Shown one piece after another: positions 8,570 through 64,000 of a DNA stretch of 64,000 nucleotides. The stretch is taken from the NCBI GenBank assembly GCA_001179505.1, contig CDMY01000531.1, positions 287,130-351,129 of the forward strand. Direction: 5' to 3'. The DNA comes from Vitrella brassicaformis CCMP3155 (lineage: Eukaryota; Protista; Chromerida). The notes below the pieces were generated by a model. The model saw nothing but the letters and a program-made list of their open reading frames with translations. It was not told the origin of the DNA and did no database searches. The translations under genes were made by a program, and so were the position numbers. Positions within the stretch are counted from its first letter, which is position 1, and every line of letters begins with the position of its first letter.

Positions 8570-9336
8570 CCCCCCCCCCCCCCCCCCCCCTGTCGATGAA
8601 TGCAATGCACCAAGTGCAGCAGAGGTCCGTCGCTGCGCGACAATCACACACCGACAGTTCACTCAACACAAATGGACAGACCAGCCCCTGACGAGCTGTC
8701 TGTCTGAGCTCGACACCTACTGCTGAACCAGATTAAAGCCAGCCCGCCAGCCGGTCAGTCGTCTCGAGGAACATCGCCAATGACGGCCTTCCACGTACCT
8801 GCACATACACAAACACAGAGAGAGAGAGAGATGTGTGTGTGGTGTGTCGTGTGCGTACCGCCATATGTTTGGGATGAGGGCATGGCCATGCCGTCGCTGC
8901 CGACAGTCGCATGGCGAGAGCTGTCAGCACCACACACTGACGGCAACACAAGCGACACACTGCAGATAGCACCGCTGTTCCTGTCCGGCCGTTGCAATGC
9001 ACGTCCAATGTCTCGCCGCGCTTGGGCAGTGAGTGCGTCGACGCGACGCCTTCTCCGTCTCATTCAGGGCATTTCGCAGAGGTCGTGTGGGCGGAGAGCG
9101 TCTGCATTCGTTATTATCCGTTCGGTCGCCGCGAGAAGAGTTCGCGTTTCTCGACGAAAGGAGACGGGAGACGGGAGACGGACCTTCTTTGAGAAGTTAT
9201 TGATTTCTCAGACAGCGCCTCTCATTTGACATTCGTTCAATCCTCCTGCGCATCGCCCTCAGCTCGCAGCAAACGGCTGACCGTTGAGGAGTGAGAGAGA
9301 GCAAACAGCAGCGACATGCTGTCAGCGTCCTTCGCC

Positions 9337-10568: not shown

Positions 10569-10589
10569 TTCGCAGCGTGGGAGTGACCT

Positions 10590-11140
10590 ACGGGAGGGAA
10601 AATAATTGCTTGATCAATCGCCCACCCATGTGAGGACCAGCGGCACGAACGTGTAGCCCTTCTGCCGACAGTTGGCACCGTACTTGCGGTCCTTGTCCCG
10701 TTCTACACAAAATACAAAGATAGACAATGACGAGTGCACTTCTGACCCTCTCCCTCCCTGTCTCTCCGTTGTGTTGTGTTCGCTGCTCACCGAAGTCCCA
10801 CTGGCTTTGGTTCTTCCGCCATTTGCAGCGATTCCCAGCGGACAGATGTGCACACACACAAATGACACACGGGCGCCCATAGCCACGGCAGGACGCTGCA
10901 GTGCTCTGCATCGACAGATCTATCTGGCCAGTCTTGCAGTGATCGAGCCATCGCAGCACACCATGCGTCTGAGTGCCGTCATGTCGGCCGGGGAGGGTGG
11001 TCAGAGGCGACAGCACACCCAGTAGGTCACCCTCTGCACAGCATGCAGTCCTTGATGCCGGCCGGCCGTTGCAATGCAGGTCCACAGCCTCGCCGCGTTT
11101 CGGCAGTGAGTGCGTCGACGCGACACCTTCTCCGTCTCAT
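10590..11140 (-). pseudogene. Fragment resembling the restriction-like (PD-(D/E)xK) endonuclease of RLE-type non-LTR retroelements, apparently intron-containing
   Basis: Minus-strand translation gives GQIDLSMQSTAAS ... WDF|ERDKDRKYGANCRQKGYTFVPLVLTW, with a GT-AG intron at about 10704-10790. Confidence 0.45.
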
Positions 11141-11708: not shown

Positions 11709-13152
11709 GATGCCGGTGGCTGAGGAGCCGGATGAGGTGTGCGCCGACGTGAGCGGGGAGGAGCCGACCATCCTCCCCTCCCGCACCTCAACACGGCCGC
11801 CACACGCCTCCCCTACAACCACCGCGGCGCCAGCGACGGCGGCAGCAGCCGAGAGGCCGCGGGAGCACCAAGCCCGCCAGTAAAGAGGGAGGGAGAGGGT
11901 GAGGGTGAGTGGGAGGAGGGCGATGAGTGGCTGGCCGACGTGGGCGAAGAGGAGACTCCAATCAGCCACCCTCTGTGCAGCAGCAGCACGTTTAGCATCG
12001 CCACGCGGGACGTAGCGGGCTCTACGCCCAATGATAGCAAATCGCAGCAAGGTAAGTAACTGACGGACTGGTCAGTCAGTGTGATGGGTTGTGGTCATGA
12101 GTGAAACTGTCGTATGTGTGTTGGCTCTGCGCTGCGTTCCGTTGCTCTCTCTGTGTGCAGGTGAGTCAGTGGGCGAGCCGTGTGTCGGATCCAATACAAC
12201 GGACGAGCCGCGGGGCGTGTGCAGCCCGTCTCCGTCGCCCGGGTCACCGATGTCTGTGCCCTGTGGGTCCGCCCCGTCCTCGCCAACGGCCACCCCTCCT
12301 CCACTGGCGTTCGTCCTCACCGAGAGCGTCACGTTTGTGGCCGAGAAACGACTGACCGGCGGGAGGGGCCACTGCGAGGTCCTGGAGGGGCGACTGCACG
12401 TCACCGAGGGCGGCGTCACCACCACACGACACGCCGTCATCATGAAGTCGGCCGCCAGAGGGGACCCACAGCGCCGCGACAACCAGAGGACCGCCGAACA
12501 CTACGACAGGCGGTGTGACGAGTATAAGCGGGGGGCCAACATGGAGGCGGAGGGGCAGTGGGCTGAGTACATCAACTCTTTCGCCACGGCCGCCCAGCGA
12601 CAAGAACACCAGCACCAGTACAATCGCTTCCCCGAGACCCACACCGGGACGGCCCACATCGTACCACAGGTGCACATCCGCAGCAACAGGCAGCCCGAAG
12701 AGCCGCAGACAGAGGGGCAGGGCCACTTCGGCGACCACTACGCCGTATTTGACAAAGTCGGCAACGGTACGCACCCTCCCACTCACTCGCCGACAGAGAG
12801 ACAGATAGACAGACACTACACAAAGAGGGACAGATGTTTGTGTCGCGTCATTTCTCTGTCTCAATCTGTATCCGTATGTCTGTCTGTCTGTCTGTCTGTC
12901 TGTGTGCAGGCAAGGAGCTCGAGGACGTGATTTTCGACTCGACGTGTGGCAGCGACGACTACGGTGCCGTGGTGGGGGTCAACGTGCTGCTGTGCATGCT
13001 TGGGCTGCACGCCCTGGGCGTGACGCACAACGACTACCACTACGGCAACCTGCTGGTGGCGGACGAGGCCACCGGCGGGCTCAAGGTCATCGACCTGGAG
13101 AGCCTGCGCAAGGTCGTGTGGGCCCGACACCCCACAGCAAAATGCAGAGAGG
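11709..13152 (+). CDS. Atypical protein kinase, repeat copy interrupted by a gap
   Basis: LTGGRGHCEV, AVIMK, HNDYHYGNLL, KVIDLE. Introns at about 12053-12160 and 12768-12910. Confidence 0.7.
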
Positions 13153-13452
13153 NNNNNNNNNNNNNNNNNNNNNNNNNNNNNNNNNNNNNNNNNNNNNNNN
13201 NNNNNNNNNNNNNNNNNNNNNNNNNNNNNNNNNNNNNNNNNNNNNNNNNNNNNNNNNNNNNNNNNNNNNNNNNNNNNNNNNNNNNNNNNNNNNNNNNNNN
13301 NNNNNNNNNNNNNNNNNNNNNNNNNNNNNNNNNNNNNNNNNNNNNNNNNNNNNNNNNNNNNNNNNNNNNNNNNNNNNNNNNNNNNNNNNNNNNNNNNNNN
13401 NNNNNNNNNNNNNNNNNNNNNNNNNNNNNNNNNNNNNNNNNNNNNNNNNNNN

Positions 13453-14085
13453 GCGGGAGGGGCCACTGCGAGATCCTGGAGGGGCGACTGCACGTCACCG
13501 AGGGCGGCGTCACCACCACACGCCACGCTGTCATCATGAAGTCGGCCGCCAGAGGGGACCCGCAGCGCCGCGACAGCGAGAGGACCGCCGAGCACCTCGA
13601 CAGGCAGTGGAACGAGTCGCTGCGGGGGGTCAACATGGAGGCCGAGGGGCAGTGGGCCTACTACATCAACTCGTTCGCCACGGCCGCCCAGGGACAAGAC
13701 CACCAGCACCAGTACAATCGCCTCCCCGAGACCCACACCGGGACGGCCCACATCGTACCACAGGTGCACATCCGCAGCAACAGGCAGCCCGAAGAGCCGC
13801 AGACAGAGGGGCAGGGCCACTTCGGCGACCACTACGCCGTATTTGACAAAGTCGGCAACGGTACGCACCCTCCCACTCACTCACTCGCCGACAGACAGAC
13901 AGACAGACAGACAGACAGAGAGACACCACACAAATCGAGACAGATCTTTGTATTGTGTCATTCATTTTTCTGTCTCCATCAATGTGTATCCGTCTGTCTG
14001 TCTGTCTGTCTGTATGTGTGCAGGCAAGGAGCTCGAGGACGTGATTTTCGACTCGACGTGTGGCAGCGACGACTATCGTGCCGTG
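13453..14085 (+). pseudogene. Internal kinase fragment between two gaps (possible assembly duplicate)
   Basis: Essentially identical to 14497-15130. Confidence 0.5.
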
Positions 14086-14385
14086 NNNNNNNNNNNNNNN
14101 NNNNNNNNNNNNNNNNNNNNNNNNNNNNNNNNNNNNNNNNNNNNNNNNNNNNNNNNNNNNNNNNNNNNNNNNNNNNNNNNNNNNNNNNNNNNNNNNNNNN
14201 NNNNNNNNNNNNNNNNNNNNNNNNNNNNNNNNNNNNNNNNNNNNNNNNNNNNNNNNNNNNNNNNNNNNNNNNNNNNNNNNNNNNNNNNNNNNNNNNNNNN
14301 NNNNNNNNNNNNNNNNNNNNNNNNNNNNNNNNNNNNNNNNNNNNNNNNNNNNNNNNNNNNNNNNNNNNNNNNNNNNNNNNNNNNN

Positions 14386-16012
14386 CCGATGTCTGTGCCC
14401 TGTGGGTCCGCCCCGTCGTCGCCAACGGCCACCTCTCCTCCACTGGCGTTCGTCCTCACCGACAGCGTCACGTTTGTGGCCGAGAAGCGGCTGACGGGCG
14501 GGAGGGGCCACTGCGAGATCCTGGAGGGGCGACTGCACGTCACCGAGGGCGGCGTCACCACCACACGCCACGCTGTCATCATGAAGTCGGCCGCCAGAGG
14601 GGACCCGCAGCGCCGCGACAGCGAGAGGACCGCCGAGCACCTCGACAGGCAGTGGAACGAGTCGCTGCGGGGGGTCAACATGGAGGCCGAGGGGCAGTGG
14701 GCCTACTACATCAACTCGTTCGCCACGGCCGCCCAGGGACAAGACCACCAGCACCAGTACAATCGCCTCCCCGAGACCCACACCGGGACGGCCCACATCG
14801 TACCACAGGTGCACATCCGCAGCAACAGGCAGCCCGAAGAGCCGCAGACAGAGGGGCAGGGCCACTTCGGCGACCACTACGCCGTATTTGACAAAGTCGG
14901 CAACGGTACGCACCCTCCCACTCACTCACTCGCCGACAGACAGACAGACAGACAGACAGACAGAGAGACACCACACAAATCGAGACAGATCTTTGTATTG
15001 TGTCATTCATTTTTCTGTCTCCATCAATGTGTATCCGTCTGTCTGTCTGTCTGTCTGTATGTGTGCAGGCAAGGAGCTCGAGGACGTGATTTTCGACTCG
15101 ACGTGTGGCAGCGACGACTATCGTGCCGTGGTGGGGGTCAACGCGCTGCTGTGCATGCTTGAGCTGCACGCCCTGGGCGTGACGCACAACGACTACCACT
15201 ACGGCAACCTGCTGGTGGCGGACGAGGCCACTGGCGAGCTCAAGGTCACCGACCTGGAGAGCCTGCGCAAGGTCCTGCGGGCCCGACACCCCACAGCCCC
15301 CTGCAGAGAGGACGGCACGCCCGGCCCCCAGCCACCCACCGGCCTCCCTCCCCTGCAAAGCCACCCGGCCCCGCTGCACCTGTCGCTGCACCATCTGCAG
15401 ACGTGGGCGAGGGGCGACTACGGCTATGACATCAAGGAGGTCAACGACTACACCCCCGCCACATTCGCCGTGTTGCTCCTCTCCTTCGACGGCCCCACCG
15501 CCGGGCACCTCCGCCACTTCGCCACCGACAAGCTTAGGGCCGTGCTGCACCACTTCAGTCACCTCGCCGAGGCGGACCTGGGCGACGAGGCCGCCAGACG
15601 CGCCGTGGGCATGTACCAGAGGGCCGTGGCGGACATCAGGCAGGAGGCCCGGCGGCTGTCAACCACCGAGCGGCAGGAGCGCGCCGTGGCGCTGGGCCGA
15701 GTGCTGCAGCAGCGACGACAAGGGCCGGCCACCAAAGCCCTCGGTGCTCAAGCAGCTGGTGCGCCAGTACTGCGACGAGACCATCGCCGACGTGTGTGCG
15801 AGTGTGAGGGTGGAGGCCTACCTCTCTCTCTCACTCTCTGGACGATGTGGCAGAGAGGACGGCACACCCGGCCCCAGGTGGCAGCACCATGGACGACGCT
15901 GACTACGAGAAGTGTGGCCTCACCGGCACATCGCTGCCTACGTTTTATATTCCGTAGTCCTTTTGATTCATGTCTCGCGTCGACGTGTCGGCTAATTCGC
16001 AGCGGGGAGTGA
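14386..16012 (+). pseudogene. Atypical kinase copy with a C-terminal 2-nt deletion frameshift
   Basis: HNDYHYGN and KVTDLE present. gcgctgggccgag here versus gcgctgtgggccgag in the 55 kb copy shifts ALWAECC to ALGRVLQ. Confidence 0.65.
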
Positions 16013-56869: not shown

Positions 56870-58419
56870 GCCGACGGGGTGGGTCACGGTCTTGGTGTGC
56901 TGTTGGTGTCGCTGTCGTGAAATGGCACGGCTGGCGAGGGGACGGCTGAACCTGATCCGTGCCGACGGGGTCTTGCTGTCGCTGTTGTGTTGCTGTGCTG
57001 TAGACAAAGGCGAAGGACGCTGACAGTATGTCGCTGCTGTTTCCTCTCTCACTCCTCAACGAGCCGTTTGTTGCGAGCGGAAGGGCGATGCGCAAGGAGG
57101 ATTGAACGAATGCCAAATGAGAGGCGTTGTCTGAGAAATAAATAAGCAGTCTCAGAAGGTACGTCTCCCGTCGAGAAAGACGCGCTTCTCGCAGGGAAAC
57201 CAACGGATAACGAGCCAGCTGGCCGGCTGCGATTCCTCTCGGCCGCCACAGCCTTCTGTAAAATGCCATGGATGAGGCGGAGAAGGCGTCGTGTCGAATC
57301 ACTCACTCCCCAAACGCGGCGAGGCTTTGGACGTGCAACGGCCGGAAAGGTTATGGCTGCTGTGTGTGCAGTGTGTCCTTCTGTTGGCCGTCAGTGTGTG
57401 GTGCCGACAGCTCTCGCCATGCGACTGTTGGCAGCGACGGCATGGCCCTCATCCCAAATTAACACACACTACCGAGACGGCGTACGCACACCACAGACAT
57501 CGACACGCATCTCTCTTGCCGTATGTGTGTGCAGGTACGTGGAAGGCCGTCATTGGCGATGTTCCTCAGGCGACTGACCGGCTGGCGTGTTGGCTTTGTT
57601 CTGGTTCAACAGTCGGTCGGTGTCGAGCTCAGATAGACAACTCTTCAGGGGCTGGTCTGTCTATCTGTATTGAGTGTCCTGTCGGTGTGTGAGTATGGAC
57701 TGGAGCAGCGACGGACCTCTGCCGCACTCAGTGTATACATAGCACGGCAGGGCATTCATCGACAGCAGCGACGGGAACAGCCAGCACATGAATGAAGAAA
57801 AAGAAGGGCAGAGACTGCCAGGGAGGCAGGCAGGCAGGCAGCCTGAGACAGGCAGGAATTGTCCGCAGAGACATGCATATATACACAGCCAGAGGCTTGG
57901 AAGCGCCCACGGCAGAGAGCGGCTTGGCCTCAGTACATGTAAGGAAGCGACCGACTGTGTGTGTTGGTCCTCTGGCAAGGGAGGCGGGCAGTCCCAACCA
58001 ACGCATACAGAGGGGAGGGAAACGGAGGGAATGAGTGAGTGGATTGCGCTGTTGTGCCATGAATCGGTTTTGTCGGTGAGACGAGACACACCCTGACGCA
58101 CATGATTATTGGATTACGTGAGTGGTGCTTGTTCTCTCCAGCCCGACACACCAGCCACGTCGTGTTCCTTGTCTCTGCAATTGGTCCGTGCCCCTCTTGT
58201 GTCTCAAGACCAGTCATCCATCCCTCGTTCTGGCGGTGTCTATTCTCGTCTCTCCCTGTCTCTCCCCGTCCCTCCCTCCCTCCCACCTGAAGCCCTTGCA
58301 CACGACAGACGCACCTTCGCCCCCACCACTCCTCGCAAGACTAGTACATCCAAGCTTACGCCGTCCGATCAGATGACCCAAAACCAGCAGCGCACACAGA
58401 CGCTAAGGCACAGGGACGT

Positions 58420-60523
58420 TTACAGTATGTCAGATAGCTTCATCCCTTCAGCAGCCAGCTGCTGAACGAATAGAGTCACTGCGGCAAAATGCACAGGGGA
58501 CTCATCCACAACAGCGCTTTGCTTATCGCCTTCTCTTGTACCGTGGTTAGATAATCCGTGGGTCCCGTCGAGCTCGCGGAACACTGAGACAGTCAATCGG
58601 CTGGGCAGTTCATGGCCAATTTGCATGAAATCTCGGCCACTATCACAGCTCATGCCGCTCTCTGAGTCGAGCTGTGATAGTGATGTCCGAAATTGTTGTT
58701 GCCACTGCCATTGCCGTCTTTGCTGATCCTCTTGTGGGTTCACGTGTGGGTTCCGGTTCCACTCTTCCCAGATGACGACAGCAACCTTGACGCCCGTGAG
58801 TCCAGGAGATGATAGCAGAGTCTGTTTTGAAGGATCATGTGAGGACACAGATGTCGATGGAGCTATAGGCCTACGTGGACTTCAGAGTAGAGGCTCTGAT
58901 TGTACGGATCGACGACATAGATGATGCCAGCAGGCTTCTTCTCGGCAGCATGAGACATGCACTCTGCAGCCAAACACGCGAGATGTTTGCTAGGCAAATG
59001 AGATGTCAATCGCTACAGTACCCTCAAACGAGACCCCCTTCATTCGGAAGAGTTGGTTTTTCTTGGTGGGCACACCGGGATACAAAATAGAAGCCGGGAA
59101 GAACCAGTCGAGCTCATCCGATTTCTTGTTGAACACTCTGCCTGAAGGGTATTGGCCTGAAGGACACAGAGTTTCAACCCGGTCCTCGGACTGTCGCGAT
59201 ATCTTTAATGCTATGTATGGTATCTAAACATCAGGTCCTCACCTGATGCACGTTGGTGATCTGAAGGTGACTTTTCCCATTCCAACACGTGCTCCAACAT
59301 CTTGAATGCGTCAAACCCGCCAGTCTGATGTCTGTACTGTTGAATCGGCTGTCCGCGAACCAGGTAGACCATCTTCAATGGCTGGTGGTCACCCCACGGG
59401 TCCTCTCCAAGGGTGGTGCCCAGCGGTTGGCCACCGCCAGACAGGTTTACCTGTCCCGTGACGCCAGCGAGGGCCTGCATGGCGTCGTTGAGCTGCTTGA
59501 CTCTGGCCAGTGCAGCGTCTCGCTCGGCGGCGAAGTCATTGCTGGTCGTCTTGTCCTTCAGATTGCCGAGGGCGATGTTGAGCTTAATGAAGTTGTCCTC
59601 AAACTGCTGCAGGGCCCTCATTGAAGCGGGGCTGCCGCCAAACAACTCGTACTTCTTTGCGACGGGGCCCATCTTGTCGTTCAGGCGCTCAGCAACATCA
59701 AGCCACGGCTCTTGTTGGTTGTCTTGTGCGAACTTCATCGCTGCTTGGTACTCTTCCCCTAAAGCCTTCGACTTTTTTTCGAATTCCGCCAAGTCGAAAG
59801 CAGAGGTTCCGTCCACGGCTGCAACAAATGGCAGATGTACTACGTCTTCCATGCTGCAGGAGACTCACCGTATAGGCTGTCTCCTATCGACCGCTGCTCC
59901 TCGCTGAACTTCGTTTGGAGCTCTGTCCACAGACGCTGCTGCTCTGCGCTACCTGAAGTAAAAGACAACGCATCAATTGCACGATTGCAATATCGCATTA
60001 TTGCAGTTCAGCGGGTACCTTTGACCTCTTGTGCAATGTCCTGCGCAATCTTCCAGAAGCCTTTTGCATTGGGGTCACCTGGCAGCCACAAACAACAGCG
60101 TGAGGTGCTCTCCCGTCCCTTCTCCATCGTGATACCGAAAGGCTTCCCGAGTTTGTAGACGAGGTAGTCATTGAACTGGTCAGGTGTGATGTCATGGAGC
60201 TCGACTTCCATGCGGAACGCCGACACAATCTTTTCAATGGGCCAGTTGATGTCCAGCCAGATGGCCTTCCACGCTTGTGCCTCCGTGTCGAACACCATCT
60301 CCATCCACTTCCCAACCACAACAAGTTCGTCCGCCCCCACGCGCTCTTTGATGTCCTTGACGATGTCCTTGTTCGTCTGTTGGAGCTCCTGGATGTGCTT
60401 CAAAATGGCCTCAAGGCCCGTATCCTCCTTGCCTGTCATCACGCGTTGCCTCTCCTCTTGGGGGTCCGCTGAGACGGAGAGGGGGCCCCCAGGCCCCCAC
60501 AAGCTCGCGGCTCTCCCAGGCAT
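58420..60523 (-). CDS. Hypothetical multi-exon helical protein with a degenerate small-GTPase-like C-terminal segment
   Basis: ORFs 60008-60565, 59211-59852 and 58420-58848 join through short in-frame GT-AG exons. PAGIIYVVDP...LLSSPGLTGVKVAVVI. Termini are uncertain. Confidence 0.55.
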
Positions 60524-60649
60524 TCCGTGACCCGCTCTCTCAAAGGCAAGCCAGATCTTCCTCACCTCCGTCGTCCGTTCAGCCTCTATCGATCGTCAGC
60601 CTCCATCGCCTTGACCAAGCTCCACCACGAGGTCTACAACCACGTGAAG

Positions 60650-62668
60650 ATGGTCCTCAGAGTCTCTGAAGCCTTGACGGTCTTCCCCGACGACAGAACA
60701 GAATCATTCAAGGATTCTAGGGCGACCTTCTACAGGGCGGAAGACAGAGAGGTGAATATCCCGAACGATGGCGAGAAGCAACTCCCAAAGGCCCCGGAGG
60801 GCGACAACAACAGCCACGTACTTTCCAAAGATGTCGCAGGCCATCTCCTGACCGTCCTCGGCTACACCGACAAGAAGGACGCGGCGCTCATCAAGGAACT
60901 TGCCAAAAAAGTCATCAACTCAAAGGAGAACATCGTGCAGAAGCCCAGAAGTGAGAACCATCCAGGAGACACCAACAAAGACAACGCAATCATCGACGCA
61001 ATCCATGGCGACGGCGTCATGTACATCAAGGATGGCGTGAGAGCTCGAGGGCAGGAGGTGCTGAACATGTTGAATCAGCACGTTGAAGAAAAGGCGCCAC
61101 TGCTAACAGAAAAGGCGGCACAGGCACTCAGAGACGTGCGCGACGTATACGAGGTATTAGCGGACAATGTGAGAATACAGATGTGCCATTGCAAGTACAA
61201 GTATCCTCCCTGACTTCTTTGCAGGAGAAGTTTAAACAGAGAGGTCACTATGACAAGGAGACCGGCACTGTGGAAACCATTGCTAGTGAGACATATCACG
61301 CGTCTCCGTCTACCGAGATGAGCAAAAATGGGCAGCCCGTCTTCATCGGCGACAAAGGGGGGGTAAGCATATGTTTGACCTACTCATTCTGTCTCTCACC
61401 ATCGTCTATTCGTGCAGCGTTTCTACATCAATGGCAAGGGACATCGTCAGTACGTCAACAAGGAGGACACCGTCCCTCGGACATTTTCAAATGAACCTCC
61501 GAAAAATACCCCTGCTGCAGAAAAAGCTGACACGACGGCGTTCGACAAGAAACCCGCTCCACCCCAGGTGAACAAAAATACGCAGTCAGCCAGAGGAAAA
61601 GCGATGTCCTCTGCGCTTTCTGAATGACAGGAGACATTGGAAGAAAGAGGGCACTACGATGGTAAGACCGGCAGTGTAAAGACGATCGCCGGTGCGACGT
61701 ATTCGGCATCTCCATCGACCCTCAAGGCTAAGAACGGGCAGCCGATCTTCGTTGGCCCCAGAGGCGGGGTAAGTCTTCAATCGGCCTTAATGACCACACT
61801 TTAGTGACCACACTCTACTGAATGCCTGTCTTCACTGTCTATGCAGCTCTTTTACATTGATGGAAAGGGGCGTCGTCAGTACGTGGACGAAAAAGACGCC
61901 ATTCCTGAGACACAGACCAGGCCTTTGAGAATGGCAGACGATGCGAAATCCGTTCCCACTGCCGATACGGTCTCCGGCAAGGGCATCGGTGAGGGCAAGC
62001 CAATCGGCGTGAATGCGAAGGGCGAGACGGTGTTCGAAGGACCGAAGGGCGGTCGCTACATAGTGGACGCCAGCAACAATCGCCACTATCGTGCCGAGGT
62101 GCAGTCCAATCAGGTGCCTTCCACCGGCAGCACCACTGGAACAGGCTCTTACACCAACACGGGCACTGTCAAGGAGGTTGGCACCAACAAAAAGGGCGAG
62201 CCTGTGTATGAGGGCCCACTCGGAGGTATATTTACAATAAGCCAGAGCAACACCCGACGCTATGGAGCCCACGTGGAGAGATATCATCCTCAGCCCATCA
62301 CAAGCACAGCCAGCAGCATCCCCGCGGCCAGTGCAAGCAGCGGCTCGACGGGAGTTGGGAGCGGAACTCTGATCGGGCACACAACCCGCGGCAATCCAGT
62401 GTATATGGGGCCGCAAGGAGGCCAATACACCGTCAGCGCTGAGGGCAATCGCGGCTACAGCGCCAATGCTGCGTACACCTTGAGCAGCGAAGGAACCGGC
62501 GGAAACTCGAGTGGCGGAGGGGGAGGCTATACGAGTGGGCAGGGAGTGGGGAGCGGAACTCTGAGCGGATACACATCTGGCGGCAATGCCGTCTTCACGG
62601 GACCTCGCGGTGGCACCTATACCGTCAGTGCCTCGGGCAATCGCAGGTACGGAGCCAAGGCGGTGTGA
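60650..62668 (+). CDS. HNH-like nuclease motif fused to six PBCV-type basic adaptor repeats
   Basis: Introns at 61154-61224, 61363-61417, 61568-61630 and 61769-61846, all in frame. NSHVLS...INSKENIVQKPRSEN; six G-x-P/T/A-V/I-F/Y-x-G-x-x-G-G-x-F/Y/F...R-x-Y repeats. The true start may lie upstream. Confidence 0.75.
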
Positions 62669-63710
62669 AGGCCCGAGGGGAGGGATGCGTACCCACCAAA
62701 TGTGACACGAGGGCAAGATGGGCTATAGGGCGATGGGTGTTCCTTCATGTCTCGGTGTCACCTGTGTCTCCTTATCTGTTCTGCTTGTTGGGAGAGAGGG
62801 CGTGATTGTCGGTTCGTGTGGCCCTGTTTCATCTCTTTGCCTGGTCGGGCTGTGGTAGGGAAGGATGCATGTGTCTTTGCCTATTGCGTTTGCGGGCCCG
62901 TCTGAATAACTGTTCAATGCAGCTGCGAGAGATTGATGGTGACAATGCAGAGAGGGCACAGGGCGCGATGAGATGAAAGAAGAAGGAATCAGCTGAGGGC
63001 AAGAAAGGCTGCATGTATGGCGAGGGATGTGGTGTTCATTCATGTCTTTTGTCGCTTGTGTCTCCTTAGCCGTTCTGTCTGACTGTCGGTCTTGTCACGC
63101 AGCAGTGGGTGCGAGGGATGAGAGAAGGGGAAGAATGGTGACGTGCAGGGGCTTTGATGTCTGGTCTGGTCTGGTCTGGTTGGCTGTCTGTATGAGGGAG
63201 GGAAGGACGGGTGGCTGTGCTTGTCGAGCGTGCGGCGATGTGTCTGATCAATGCAGTTTCTTGAAGGGGTGGACTGATGAGACAGACTACCATGTGTAAG
63301 CGTGCACACGCCCTTTCGCGCACTGCGTAATGGTACACAGGCACGTGCAAAGACAAAATACGTACCGAATGGCTCTTGCACCCATCATTAGCAGCACGGG
63401 AAAAATGAGTACTGTTAAATATTTATACTGGTGGTGGTTCTTGAGTCACGTACGGTGCGAACTGCATTCACTCATTCATTGAATGTCTCGCTCGCGTTAC
63501 ATAGTACATAACACAGACAGATCGATCCGGGTGGACAAGCTGGATGGATGGATGGATGGATAAGCTGACGGACGGTGCGTGGCCTGACTTCGCTCTTAAG
63601 AACATGTGTGTACACATGGGTGGGCGGTTGATTAAGCCATCGTCTTCCCTCCCGTAGGTCACTCCCACGCTGCGAATTCATCAGCCGACACAACCACGCG
63701 AGACATCAAT

Positions 63711-64000
63711 CTAAAGGACTACGGAATATAAAACGTAGGCAGCGATGACCGGTGAGGCCACACTTGTCGTAGTCAGCGTCGTCCATGGTGCTGCCACGTG
63801 GGGGCCGGGCGTGCCGTCCTCTCTGCAGGGGGCTGTCGGGCGTCGGGCCCGCAGGATCTTGCGCAGGCTCTCCAGGTCGATGACCTTGAGCTCGCCAGTG
63901 GCCTCGTCCGCCACCAGCAGGTTGCCGTAGTGGTAGTCGTTGTGCGTCACGCCCAGGGCGTGCAGCCCAAGCATGCACAGCAGCACATTGACCCCCACCA
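63711..64000 (-). pseudogene. Further atypical kinase copy, internally deleted and running off the window
   Basis: HNDYHYGNLL and KVIDLE, then REDGTPGP joined directly to the VAAPWTTL module. Confidence 0.75.

What the first reader, a model, noticed from the sequence alone, without database searches (positions are those of the whole stretch)
60650..62668. HNH-like nuclease fused to six chlorovirus-type (PBCV) basic adaptor repeats
Seen: N-terminal NSHVLS (His at 60815) and N-I-V-Q-K-P-R-S-E-N (60929-60958), which has the same 10-residue N...N spacing as the HNH N-L-x-x-L-C-x-x-C-N/H strand-helix. Six repeats follow: KNGQPVFIGDKGG|RFYINGKGHRQY, KNGQPIFVGPRGG|LFYIDGKGRRQY, NAKGETVFEGPKGGRYIVDASNNRHY, NKKGEPVYEGPLGGIFTISQSNTRRY, TTRGNPVYMGPQGGQYTVSAEGNRGY and TSGGNAVFTGPRGGTYTVSASGNRRY. 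The first two sit in a duplicated two-exon module with an identical intron position. Known: this repeat pattern matches the PBCV-specific basic adaptor domain (Pfam PF08789), described in chloroviruses fused to Ser/Thr kinases; similar motifs also occur in small bacterial proteins. Inferred: an intronised, virus- or bacterium-derived nucleic-acid-targeting protein, with an architecture I do not recognise from any described system.
Basis: partly seen in the sequence, partly recalled or inferred. Interest (0 to 1): 0.8.

Follow-up and report, generated by a model that had tools for sequence, protein, structure and literature searches.

The report
Algal orphan protein with six adaptor repeats
This is an ordinary intron-bearing nuclear gene of the alga Vitrella brassicaformis whose protein carries six copies of a small basic module also found in chloroviruses, phages and bacteria, behind an N-terminal part with no known relatives and no sign of being a nuclease.

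Summary
The sequence facts hold. The gene at 60650-62668 (+) has five exons and four phase-0 GT..AG introns. Its product equals the public 583-aa protein CEM20978.1 of Vitrella brassicaformis CCMP3155, annotated as uncharacterised. Six repeats are present, and the first two are split by introns at the same codon. The repeats match Pfam PF08789 (PBCV basic adaptor) just above its cut-off. A predicted repeat unit folds as four beta strands, and its best viral fold matches are proteins named after that domain. The same motif is common in giant-virus and phage-like contigs. It also sits at the C-terminus of secreted Bacteroidota proteins, one of them fused to a DNA/RNA non-specific endonuclease. 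The HNH reading is not supported. Residues 1-168 match no family profile or solved structure, and only themselves among 1.84 billion representative proteins. The quoted His/Asn pattern appears in 41% of shuffles, and the structure model is unreliable. Best reading: a native, soluble, multivalent tether, probably for nucleic acid, with an orphan acidic head of unknown role. It is a new member of a known domain family, of modest interest.

The parts
60650..62668 (+). Whole coding region of the gene (public protein CEM20978.1 / A0A0G4FZL9, 583 aa)
   Evidence: The same DNA is present at 100% identity in three independent read-set assemblies.
60650..61153 (+).
   Evidence: No family, PDB or protein relative. 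GC by codon position is 0.60/0.33/0.70, which fits coding sequence. AlphaFold pLDDT is 38.
61154..61224 (+). Intron 1 (71 nt, GT..AG, phase 0)
   Evidence: GC is 0.44 against 0.52-0.60 in the exons. Its position is homologous to that of intron 3.
61225..61362 (+). Exon 2: residues 169-214, the module 1 lead-in and the first half of repeat 1
61363..61417 (+). Intron 2 (55 nt, phase 0), which splits repeat 1 after the Gly-Gly turn
61418..61567 (+). Exon 3: residues 215-264, the second half of repeat 1 and a linker
61568..61630 (+). Intron 3 (63 nt, phase 0)
61631..61768 (+). Exon 4: residues 265-310, a paralogue of exon 2 (61% identical), holding the first half of repeat 2
   Evidence: dN/dS against exon 2 is 0.15.
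61769..61846 (+). Intron 4 (78 nt, phase 0), which splits repeat 2 at the same codon as intron 2 splits repeat 1
61847..62668 (+). Exon 5: residues 311-583 plus the stop; the second half of repeat 2, repeats 3-6 and Gly/Ser/Thr-rich linkers
61330..61453 (+). Repeat 1 core (residues 204-226, spans intron 2)
61736..61882 (+). Repeat 2 core (residues 300-322, spans intron 4)
62021..62089 (+). Repeat 3 core (residues 369-391); on its own it passes the PF08789 cut-off
62195..62263 (+). Repeat 4 core (residues 427-449)
62390..62458 (+). Repeat 5 core (residues 492-514)
62582..62650 (+). Repeat 6 core (residues 556-578); PF08789 16.0 bits on its own

Best explanation
This is a native nuclear gene of Vitrella brassicaformis encoding a soluble 62-kDa protein. 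An acidic N-terminal region of about 168 residues, restricted to this lineage, is followed by six small basic four-stranded beta modules of the PF08789 family. The modules are joined by flexible Gly/Ser/Thr-rich linkers. The array grew by tandem duplication in three pairs, the oldest pair copied together with its two introns. Most likely mechanism (inferred): each module makes a weak contact with a polyanionic ligand, most probably DNA or RNA. Six modules together give avidity and tether the N-terminal region to that ligand. What the N-terminal region does is unknown, and nothing shows it to be catalytic.
For: Shown: the gene model equals the public protein. Exons are GC-richer than introns, and exon 1 has coding-type codon-position periodicity. 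dN/dS between the internal paralogues is 0.15-0.38, with dS near saturation. The neighbours are ordinary eukaryotic genes: GRIP, TYW2, HSP70, TOP3B and pantothenate enzymes. No segment is hydrophobic (maximum Kyte-Doolittle 0.73), and the repeat region has pI 9.4. PF08789 is matched above its cut-off. The repeat unit model has four strands and pLDDT 69. The top BFVD fold matches are proteins named after the PBCV adaptor domain. Profile-profile probability is 97.5% against viral members and 98.3% against bacterial members. Supporting the inferred ligand: PBCV-1 kinases A278L and A282L, which carry this domain, were recovered among the DNA-associated virion proteins (PMC3281028). A Bacteroidales protein joins the domain to a DNA/RNA non-specific endonuclease.
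Against: No binding of this domain to nucleic acid has been shown directly anywhere. Most bacterial carriers found here are secreted or lipoproteins, and some are fused to Fib_succ_major and TPR domains, so the ligand could be something else. Some Vitrella repeats are barely basic, at net +0.4 to +0.9. The Pfam match is marginal. The viral and bacterial comparison sets were fetched with a pattern taken from the motif, so 10 of the 28-31 aligned columns agree by construction. Expression and splicing were not checked against transcripts.
Confidence: 0.5

Rival explanations
1. One reading: residues 1-168 are a diverged HNH/His-Me-finger nuclease, and the six adaptors aim it at nucleic acid.
For: A His and an N-x8-N stretch exist at the stated places. 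The architecture has precedents. L083 in a Bacteroidales genome combines Endonuclease_NS, a family I know as a His-Me-finger nuclease, with a C-terminal PF08789 domain. A chlorovirus protein named 'Endonuclease' is among the fold matches of the repeat unit (rank 14).
Against: No HNH-clan or Endonuclease_NS profile matches at E up to 10, whether the region is scanned whole or in fragments. There is no PDB sequence match and no similarity to the L083 nuclease. The pattern occurs in 41% of shuffles. The 38 residues between the His and the first Asn are modelled as two helices rather than a hairpin, although that model is unreliable. The region has no cysteine and no relatives in which to see conservation.
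Confidence: 0.06
2. The repeats are adaptors for a ligand other than nucleic acid, such as a protein partner, a glycan or a surface polymer. The protein would then be a scaffold unrelated to DNA or RNA.
For: In Bacteroidota the motif closes 150-250-aa proteins that begin with signal peptides or lipoboxes. It is also fused to Fib_succ_major plus TPR proteins. Gly/Ser/Thr-rich linkers are common in scaffold proteins. The domain's function has never been measured, and no solved structure exists.
Against: The Vitrella protein has no signal peptide or hydrophobic segment, so it is not secreted by the classical route. The domain-bearing chlorovirus proteins are DNA-associated (PMC3281028). One bacterial fusion partner is a nuclease.
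Confidence: 0.3
3. Annotation artefact: exon 1, or the whole model, is not a real coding unit, and the N-terminal 'domain' is a chance open frame in GC-rich DNA.
For: The window holds 49 stop-free frames of at least 228 codons. Exon 1 has no relative anywhere. No transcript-derived contig encoding the 583-aa product was found.
Against: Exon 1 shows strong codon-position GC periodicity in the annotated frame. All four introns are GT..AG and phase 0 and are AT-richer than the exons. The repeats are under purifying selection, so at least exons 2-5 are coding.
Confidence: 0.06

Closest known systems
Pfam PF08789, PBCV-specific basic adaptor domain (for example the PBCV-1 kinases A278L and A282L)
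   Same: The same short motif: a Gly-Pro-x-Gly-Gly turn between two strands, then an aromatic residue and a basic-x-Tyr strand. The Pfam score is above the cut-off. The fold model matches predicted structures of proteins named after this domain.
   Different: There are six tandem copies here, whereas every one of 109 motif-bearing frames in the fetched viral and bacterial loci holds one. The gene is cellular, intron-split and from an alveolate alga. The partner is an orphan region rather than a kinase. Several copies are only weakly basic.
Secreted Bacteroidota proteins that end in the same motif, including L083 (Endonuclease_NS + DUF5763 + PF08789)
   Same: The motif is shared, including the downstream columns the search pattern did not demand, which 96 of 121 matches carry. 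The profile match has probability 98.3%. L083 shows that a nuclease can be coupled to this module.
   Different: The bacterial proteins have signal peptides and a single C-terminal copy. The Vitrella protein has neither, and its head does not resemble the L083 nuclease.
HNH / His-Me-finger nucleases
   Same: Only a His and an Asn-x8-Asn spacing, which is no more than chance gives.
   Different: There is no profile match, no supported fold, no cysteine pairs and no conserved catalytic residues that could be assessed.

Membership tests
PF08789 PBCV_basic_adap | Score at or above Pfam's gathering cut-off (20.4 bits) | tested here: met
   Exon 5 scores 26.1 bits, P0001 23.4 and repeat 3 alone 20.9. 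Repeat 6 scores 16.0. Repeats 4 and 5 alone give no hit.
PF08789 PBCV_basic_adap | Core motif: Gly-Pro-x-Gly-Gly, an aromatic residue, then basic-x-Tyr a few residues later | tested here: met
   The motif is present in all six repeats; repeat 1 has Asp in place of Pro. The same motif is seen in viral pieces, 6 of 10 of which pass the Pfam cut-off, and in bacterial proteins, 4 of 10 of which pass it.
PF08789 PBCV_basic_adap | Profile-profile similarity to accepted members | tested here: met
   hhalign gives 97.5% (E 7e-12) against the viral set and 98.3% (E 2e-14) against the bacterial set. Both values are inflated, because the sets were fetched with a 10-residue pattern taken from the motif.
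PF08789 PBCV_basic_adap | Shared fold with family members | tested here: inconclusive
   The model has pLDDT 69 and four strands. The top BFVD matches are named members with probability 0.90-0.99, but E is only 0.07-0.5, as expected for 43 residues. No solved structure of the family exists.
PF08789 PBCV_basic_adap | Basic character | tested here: inconclusive
   Net charge per repeat is +0.4 to +3.8, and the repeat region has pI 9.4.
HNH / His-Me-finger nuclease | Match to an HNH-clan or Endonuclease_NS profile | tested here: not met
   No such family appears at E up to 10 for residues 1-168 or for two fragments around the motifs. NCBIfam, PHROGs and PADLOC give no such match either.
HNH / His-Me-finger nuclease | Beta-beta-alpha metal-finger fold | tested here: inconclusive
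   The single-sequence AlphaFold model has pLDDT 38. It shows helices at 61-71 and 75-90 between the His and the Asn. The fold search gives no nuclease of this kind; the best hit has E 0.67 and probability 0.28.
HNH / His-Me-finger nuclease | Catalytic His and metal-binding Asn/His conserved among relatives | not testable with these tools
   The only match among 1.84 billion representative proteins is the protein itself.
HNH / His-Me-finger nuclease | Motif more frequent than chance | tested here: not met
   The pattern occurs in 41% of 20000 shuffles.
HNH / His-Me-finger nuclease | Metal-dependent nuclease activity | not testable with these tools
   No computation can show this.

The most novel reading that the evidence does not exclude
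The orphan N-terminal region is a new effector or enzyme fold that acts on nucleic acid, possibly an unrecognisably diverged metal-finger nuclease. A six-fold adaptor array would deliver it to its substrate. That would make this a eukaryotic counterpart of the bacterial nuclease-adaptor fusion and would give the 'PBCV-specific' domain its first assigned role in a cell.
Probability: 0.07. Interest if true: 0.6.

Novelty: new member of a known kind. Interest (0 to 1): 0.3.

Why it matters
The domain called 'PBCV-specific' is not virus-specific. Tool-derived sequences here place it in giant-virus MAGs, phage-like contigs and many Bacteroidota secreted proteins, and as a six-copy array in a nuclear gene of a chromerid alga, a photosynthetic relative of apicomplexan parasites. 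The family has no solved structure and no measured function. A six-fold cellular array and a bacterial nuclease fusion are useful pointers to what it binds. The nuclease claim, which made the finding look striking, has no support.

Tried and rejected
- Word-index protein searches with exon 1, exon 5 and residues 172-330 of P0001 found nothing or only the protein itself. The exon 5 search was swamped by low-complexity words.
- The search for related loci with the repeat alignment in viral contigs, and with exon 5 in bacterial genomes, matched patterns but gave no tblastn confirmation. One search failed because the alignment had no conserved stretch.
I resent it with 14.
- The AlphaFold model of the N-terminal region was too poor to use, so its fold search is meaningless.
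- A PDB fold search of the repeat unit gave only generic beta-meander matches.
- Searches of papers for the run accessions and the protein accessions gave nothing.
- Rejected: an endogenous giant-virus insertion, because the window has no viral hallmark family and its composition is uniform.
- Rejected: contamination, because the gene has spliceosomal introns, lies on a 351-kb contig among eukaryotic genes and appears in three read sets.
- Rejected: the divergent neighbour as an immunity partner, because it has no family match on record and nothing links the two genes.

Full report
**What the window is.** The protein search with exon 1 returned one match among 1,835,955,588 representative proteins. 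It is a 583-aa protein, 100% identical over residues 1-168. Its cluster record names it CEM20978.1 / A0A0G4FZL9, 'unnamed protein product' of Vitrella brassicaformis CCMP3155. It lies on contig CDMY01000531.1 of GCA_001179505.1, and that contig ends exactly where the window ends. Three independent read-set assemblies carry the same DNA at 100% identity. The window also holds HSP70, a TOP3B-type topoisomerase, pantothenate-pathway domains, a GRIP-domain gene and a TYW2-type methyltransferase. It has no viral hallmark family, no tRNA and no Rfam match. GC content is even at 0.50-0.62. This is ordinary nuclear DNA of a chromerid alga.

**The gene model.** I searched the model exon by exon, by reference, and did not join the exons myself; that joined step was left out. 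The public protein returned stood in for it. Each exon's translation is found in that protein, end to end and in order.
- The four introns are 71, 55, 63 and 78 nt long. All are GT..AG and phase 0, and their GC is 0.44-0.48 against 0.52-0.60 in the exons.
- Exon 1 has GC of 0.60/0.33/0.70 at codon positions 1, 2 and 3, which is a coding-type signal.
- No transcript evidence could be consulted.

**The repeats.** Six copies of a 23-residue core are present: two short strands around a Gly-Pro-x-Gly-Gly turn, an aromatic residue, then basic-x-Tyr. A regular expression written from these six copies finds 6 matches, against none in 5000 shuffles, so that count describes them rather than testing them independently. 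With the preceding strand, the unit is about 43 residues long.
- The copies fall into three pairs. Modules 1 and 2 include a 35-residue lead-in and are duplicated together with both flanking and internal introns; the exons are conserved and the introns have diverged.
- Repeats 3 and 4 lie 174 nt apart, and repeats 5 and 6 lie 192 nt apart.
- dN/dS between partners is 0.15-0.38, with synonymous sites near saturation. The duplications are therefore old and the peptide is under selection.

**Family assignment.**
- PF08789 is matched above its 20.4-bit cut-off by exon 5 (26.1), by the whole protein (23.4) and by repeat 3 alone (20.9).
- An AlphaFold model of one unit, built on the alignment of the protein's own repeats, has pLDDT 69 and four strands.
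- Its best matches among predicted viral structures include two entries named 'PBCV-specific basic adaptor domain-containing protein', one of them from a chlorovirus. A chlorovirus protein named 'Endonuclease' is also among them. Probabilities are 0.90-0.99, but E-values are only 0.07-0.5.
- Nothing in the PDB matches by fold or by profile.

**Relatives fetched with a motif pattern.** I scanned with a degenerate DNA pattern taken from the window's own repeats.
- In viral contigs it found 41 loci, some of them giant-virus MAGs. Six of ten excised pieces pass the PF08789 cut-off.
- 96 of 121 bacterial matches also carry the downstream part of the motif, which the pattern did not demand.
- Profile-profile comparison of the Vitrella repeats gives 97.5% against the viral set and 98.3% against the bacterial set. 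These figures are inflated, because ten columns agree by construction.
- By tblastn, exon 5 matches these loci at 36-59% identity over 24-59 residues.

**Architectures elsewhere.**
- Every one of the 109 motif-bearing open frames in the fetched loci has a single copy; the Vitrella protein has six.
- Viral carriers are mostly 48-94-aa proteins, or larger proteins with unknown partner domains.
- Bacterial carriers begin with signal peptides or lipoboxes and end with the motif.
- Two bacterial carriers are Fib_succ_major plus TPR proteins. One, from a Bacteroidales genome (L083), combines a DNA/RNA non-specific endonuclease (197 bits), DUF5763 and the adaptor.
- In PBCV-1, the two kinases annotated with this domain were found among the DNA-associated proteins of the virion (PMC3281028).

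**The N-terminal region.** Residues 1-168 are acidic (pI 5.6) and have no cysteine.
- They match no Pfam, NCBIfam, PHROG or PADLOC family beyond noise, whether scanned whole or as fragments around the two motifs.
- They match no PDB sequence and no protein other than themselves.
- They match nothing in the 161 loci that carry the adaptor motif, nor the L083 nuclease.
- The single-sequence AlphaFold model is unreliable, with pLDDT 38. It shows a disordered first 54 residues followed by helices, two of them lying between the quoted His and Asn. Its fold search returns nothing meaningful.
- The quoted pattern arises in 41% of shuffles.
- The HNH reading is therefore unsupported. Because the structure is unknown, it is not formally excluded.

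**Mechanism.** Shown: a native gene under selection, encoding a soluble protein with no hydrophobic segment, and a basic (pI 9.4) six-module array on flexible linkers. Inferred: multivalent, avidity-based tethering to a polyanion, most likely nucleic acid. That inference rests on the chlorovirus DNA-associated proteins and on the bacterial nuclease fusion. The secreted bacterial carriers keep a non-nucleic-acid ligand in play. The role of the N-terminal region is open.

**Verdict.** The repeats and the intron observation are real, and the family assignment is sound though marginal in score. The nuclease is not supported. This is a new, unusually repetitive cellular member of a known but uncharacterised domain family.

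Noticed in passing
window 63711-64000 (-): An open frame with a kinase-type catalytic loop. Its Pfam matches to Kdo (E 0.0026) and APH (E 0.0097) are weak and below the cut-offs. The public annotation gives an 87-aa product. The gene is cut by the contig end and is convergent with the finding's gene. Chlorovirus adaptors are fused to kinases, but nothing links these two genes.
   Followed up: partly
window 57528-57728 and 8613-8805; 63613-63674 and 10571-10632: Dispersed inverted repeat copies, 86% and 90% identical. All three read-set assemblies break at 63674, which suggests a repeated element there.
   Followed up: no
window 61787-61814: A 14-nt unit duplicated in tandem inside intron 4.
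   Followed up: no
window 58420-60523 (-): The divergent neighbour, a 556-aa annotated product with no Pfam hit on record. Only 126 bp separate the two start codons, so the promoter region is probably shared.
   Followed up: partly
window 12753-16009: Very long stop-free frames on both strands, up to 712 codons. The longest one was scanned on its own and gave no Pfam match.
   Followed up: no
L083:486-1637 (-), contig CAZKCK010000078.1, uncultured Bacteroidales: A 384-aa protein made of a signal peptide, Endonuclease_NS, DUF5763 and a C-terminal PBCV-type adaptor. It is a natural nuclease-adaptor fusion.
   Followed up: partly
L046-L165 (bacterial loci): In Bacteroidota the motif lies at the extreme C-terminus of 150-250-aa proteins with signal peptides or lipoboxes. 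It is preceded by a conserved Gly-rich strand, and some genomes hold two such genes.
   Followed up: partly
window 60527-60649 (+): The 41 codons upstream of the annotated ATG are open in frame and show the same codon-position GC bias (0.59/0.42/0.73). The true start, or a further upstream exon, is not settled.
   Followed up: no
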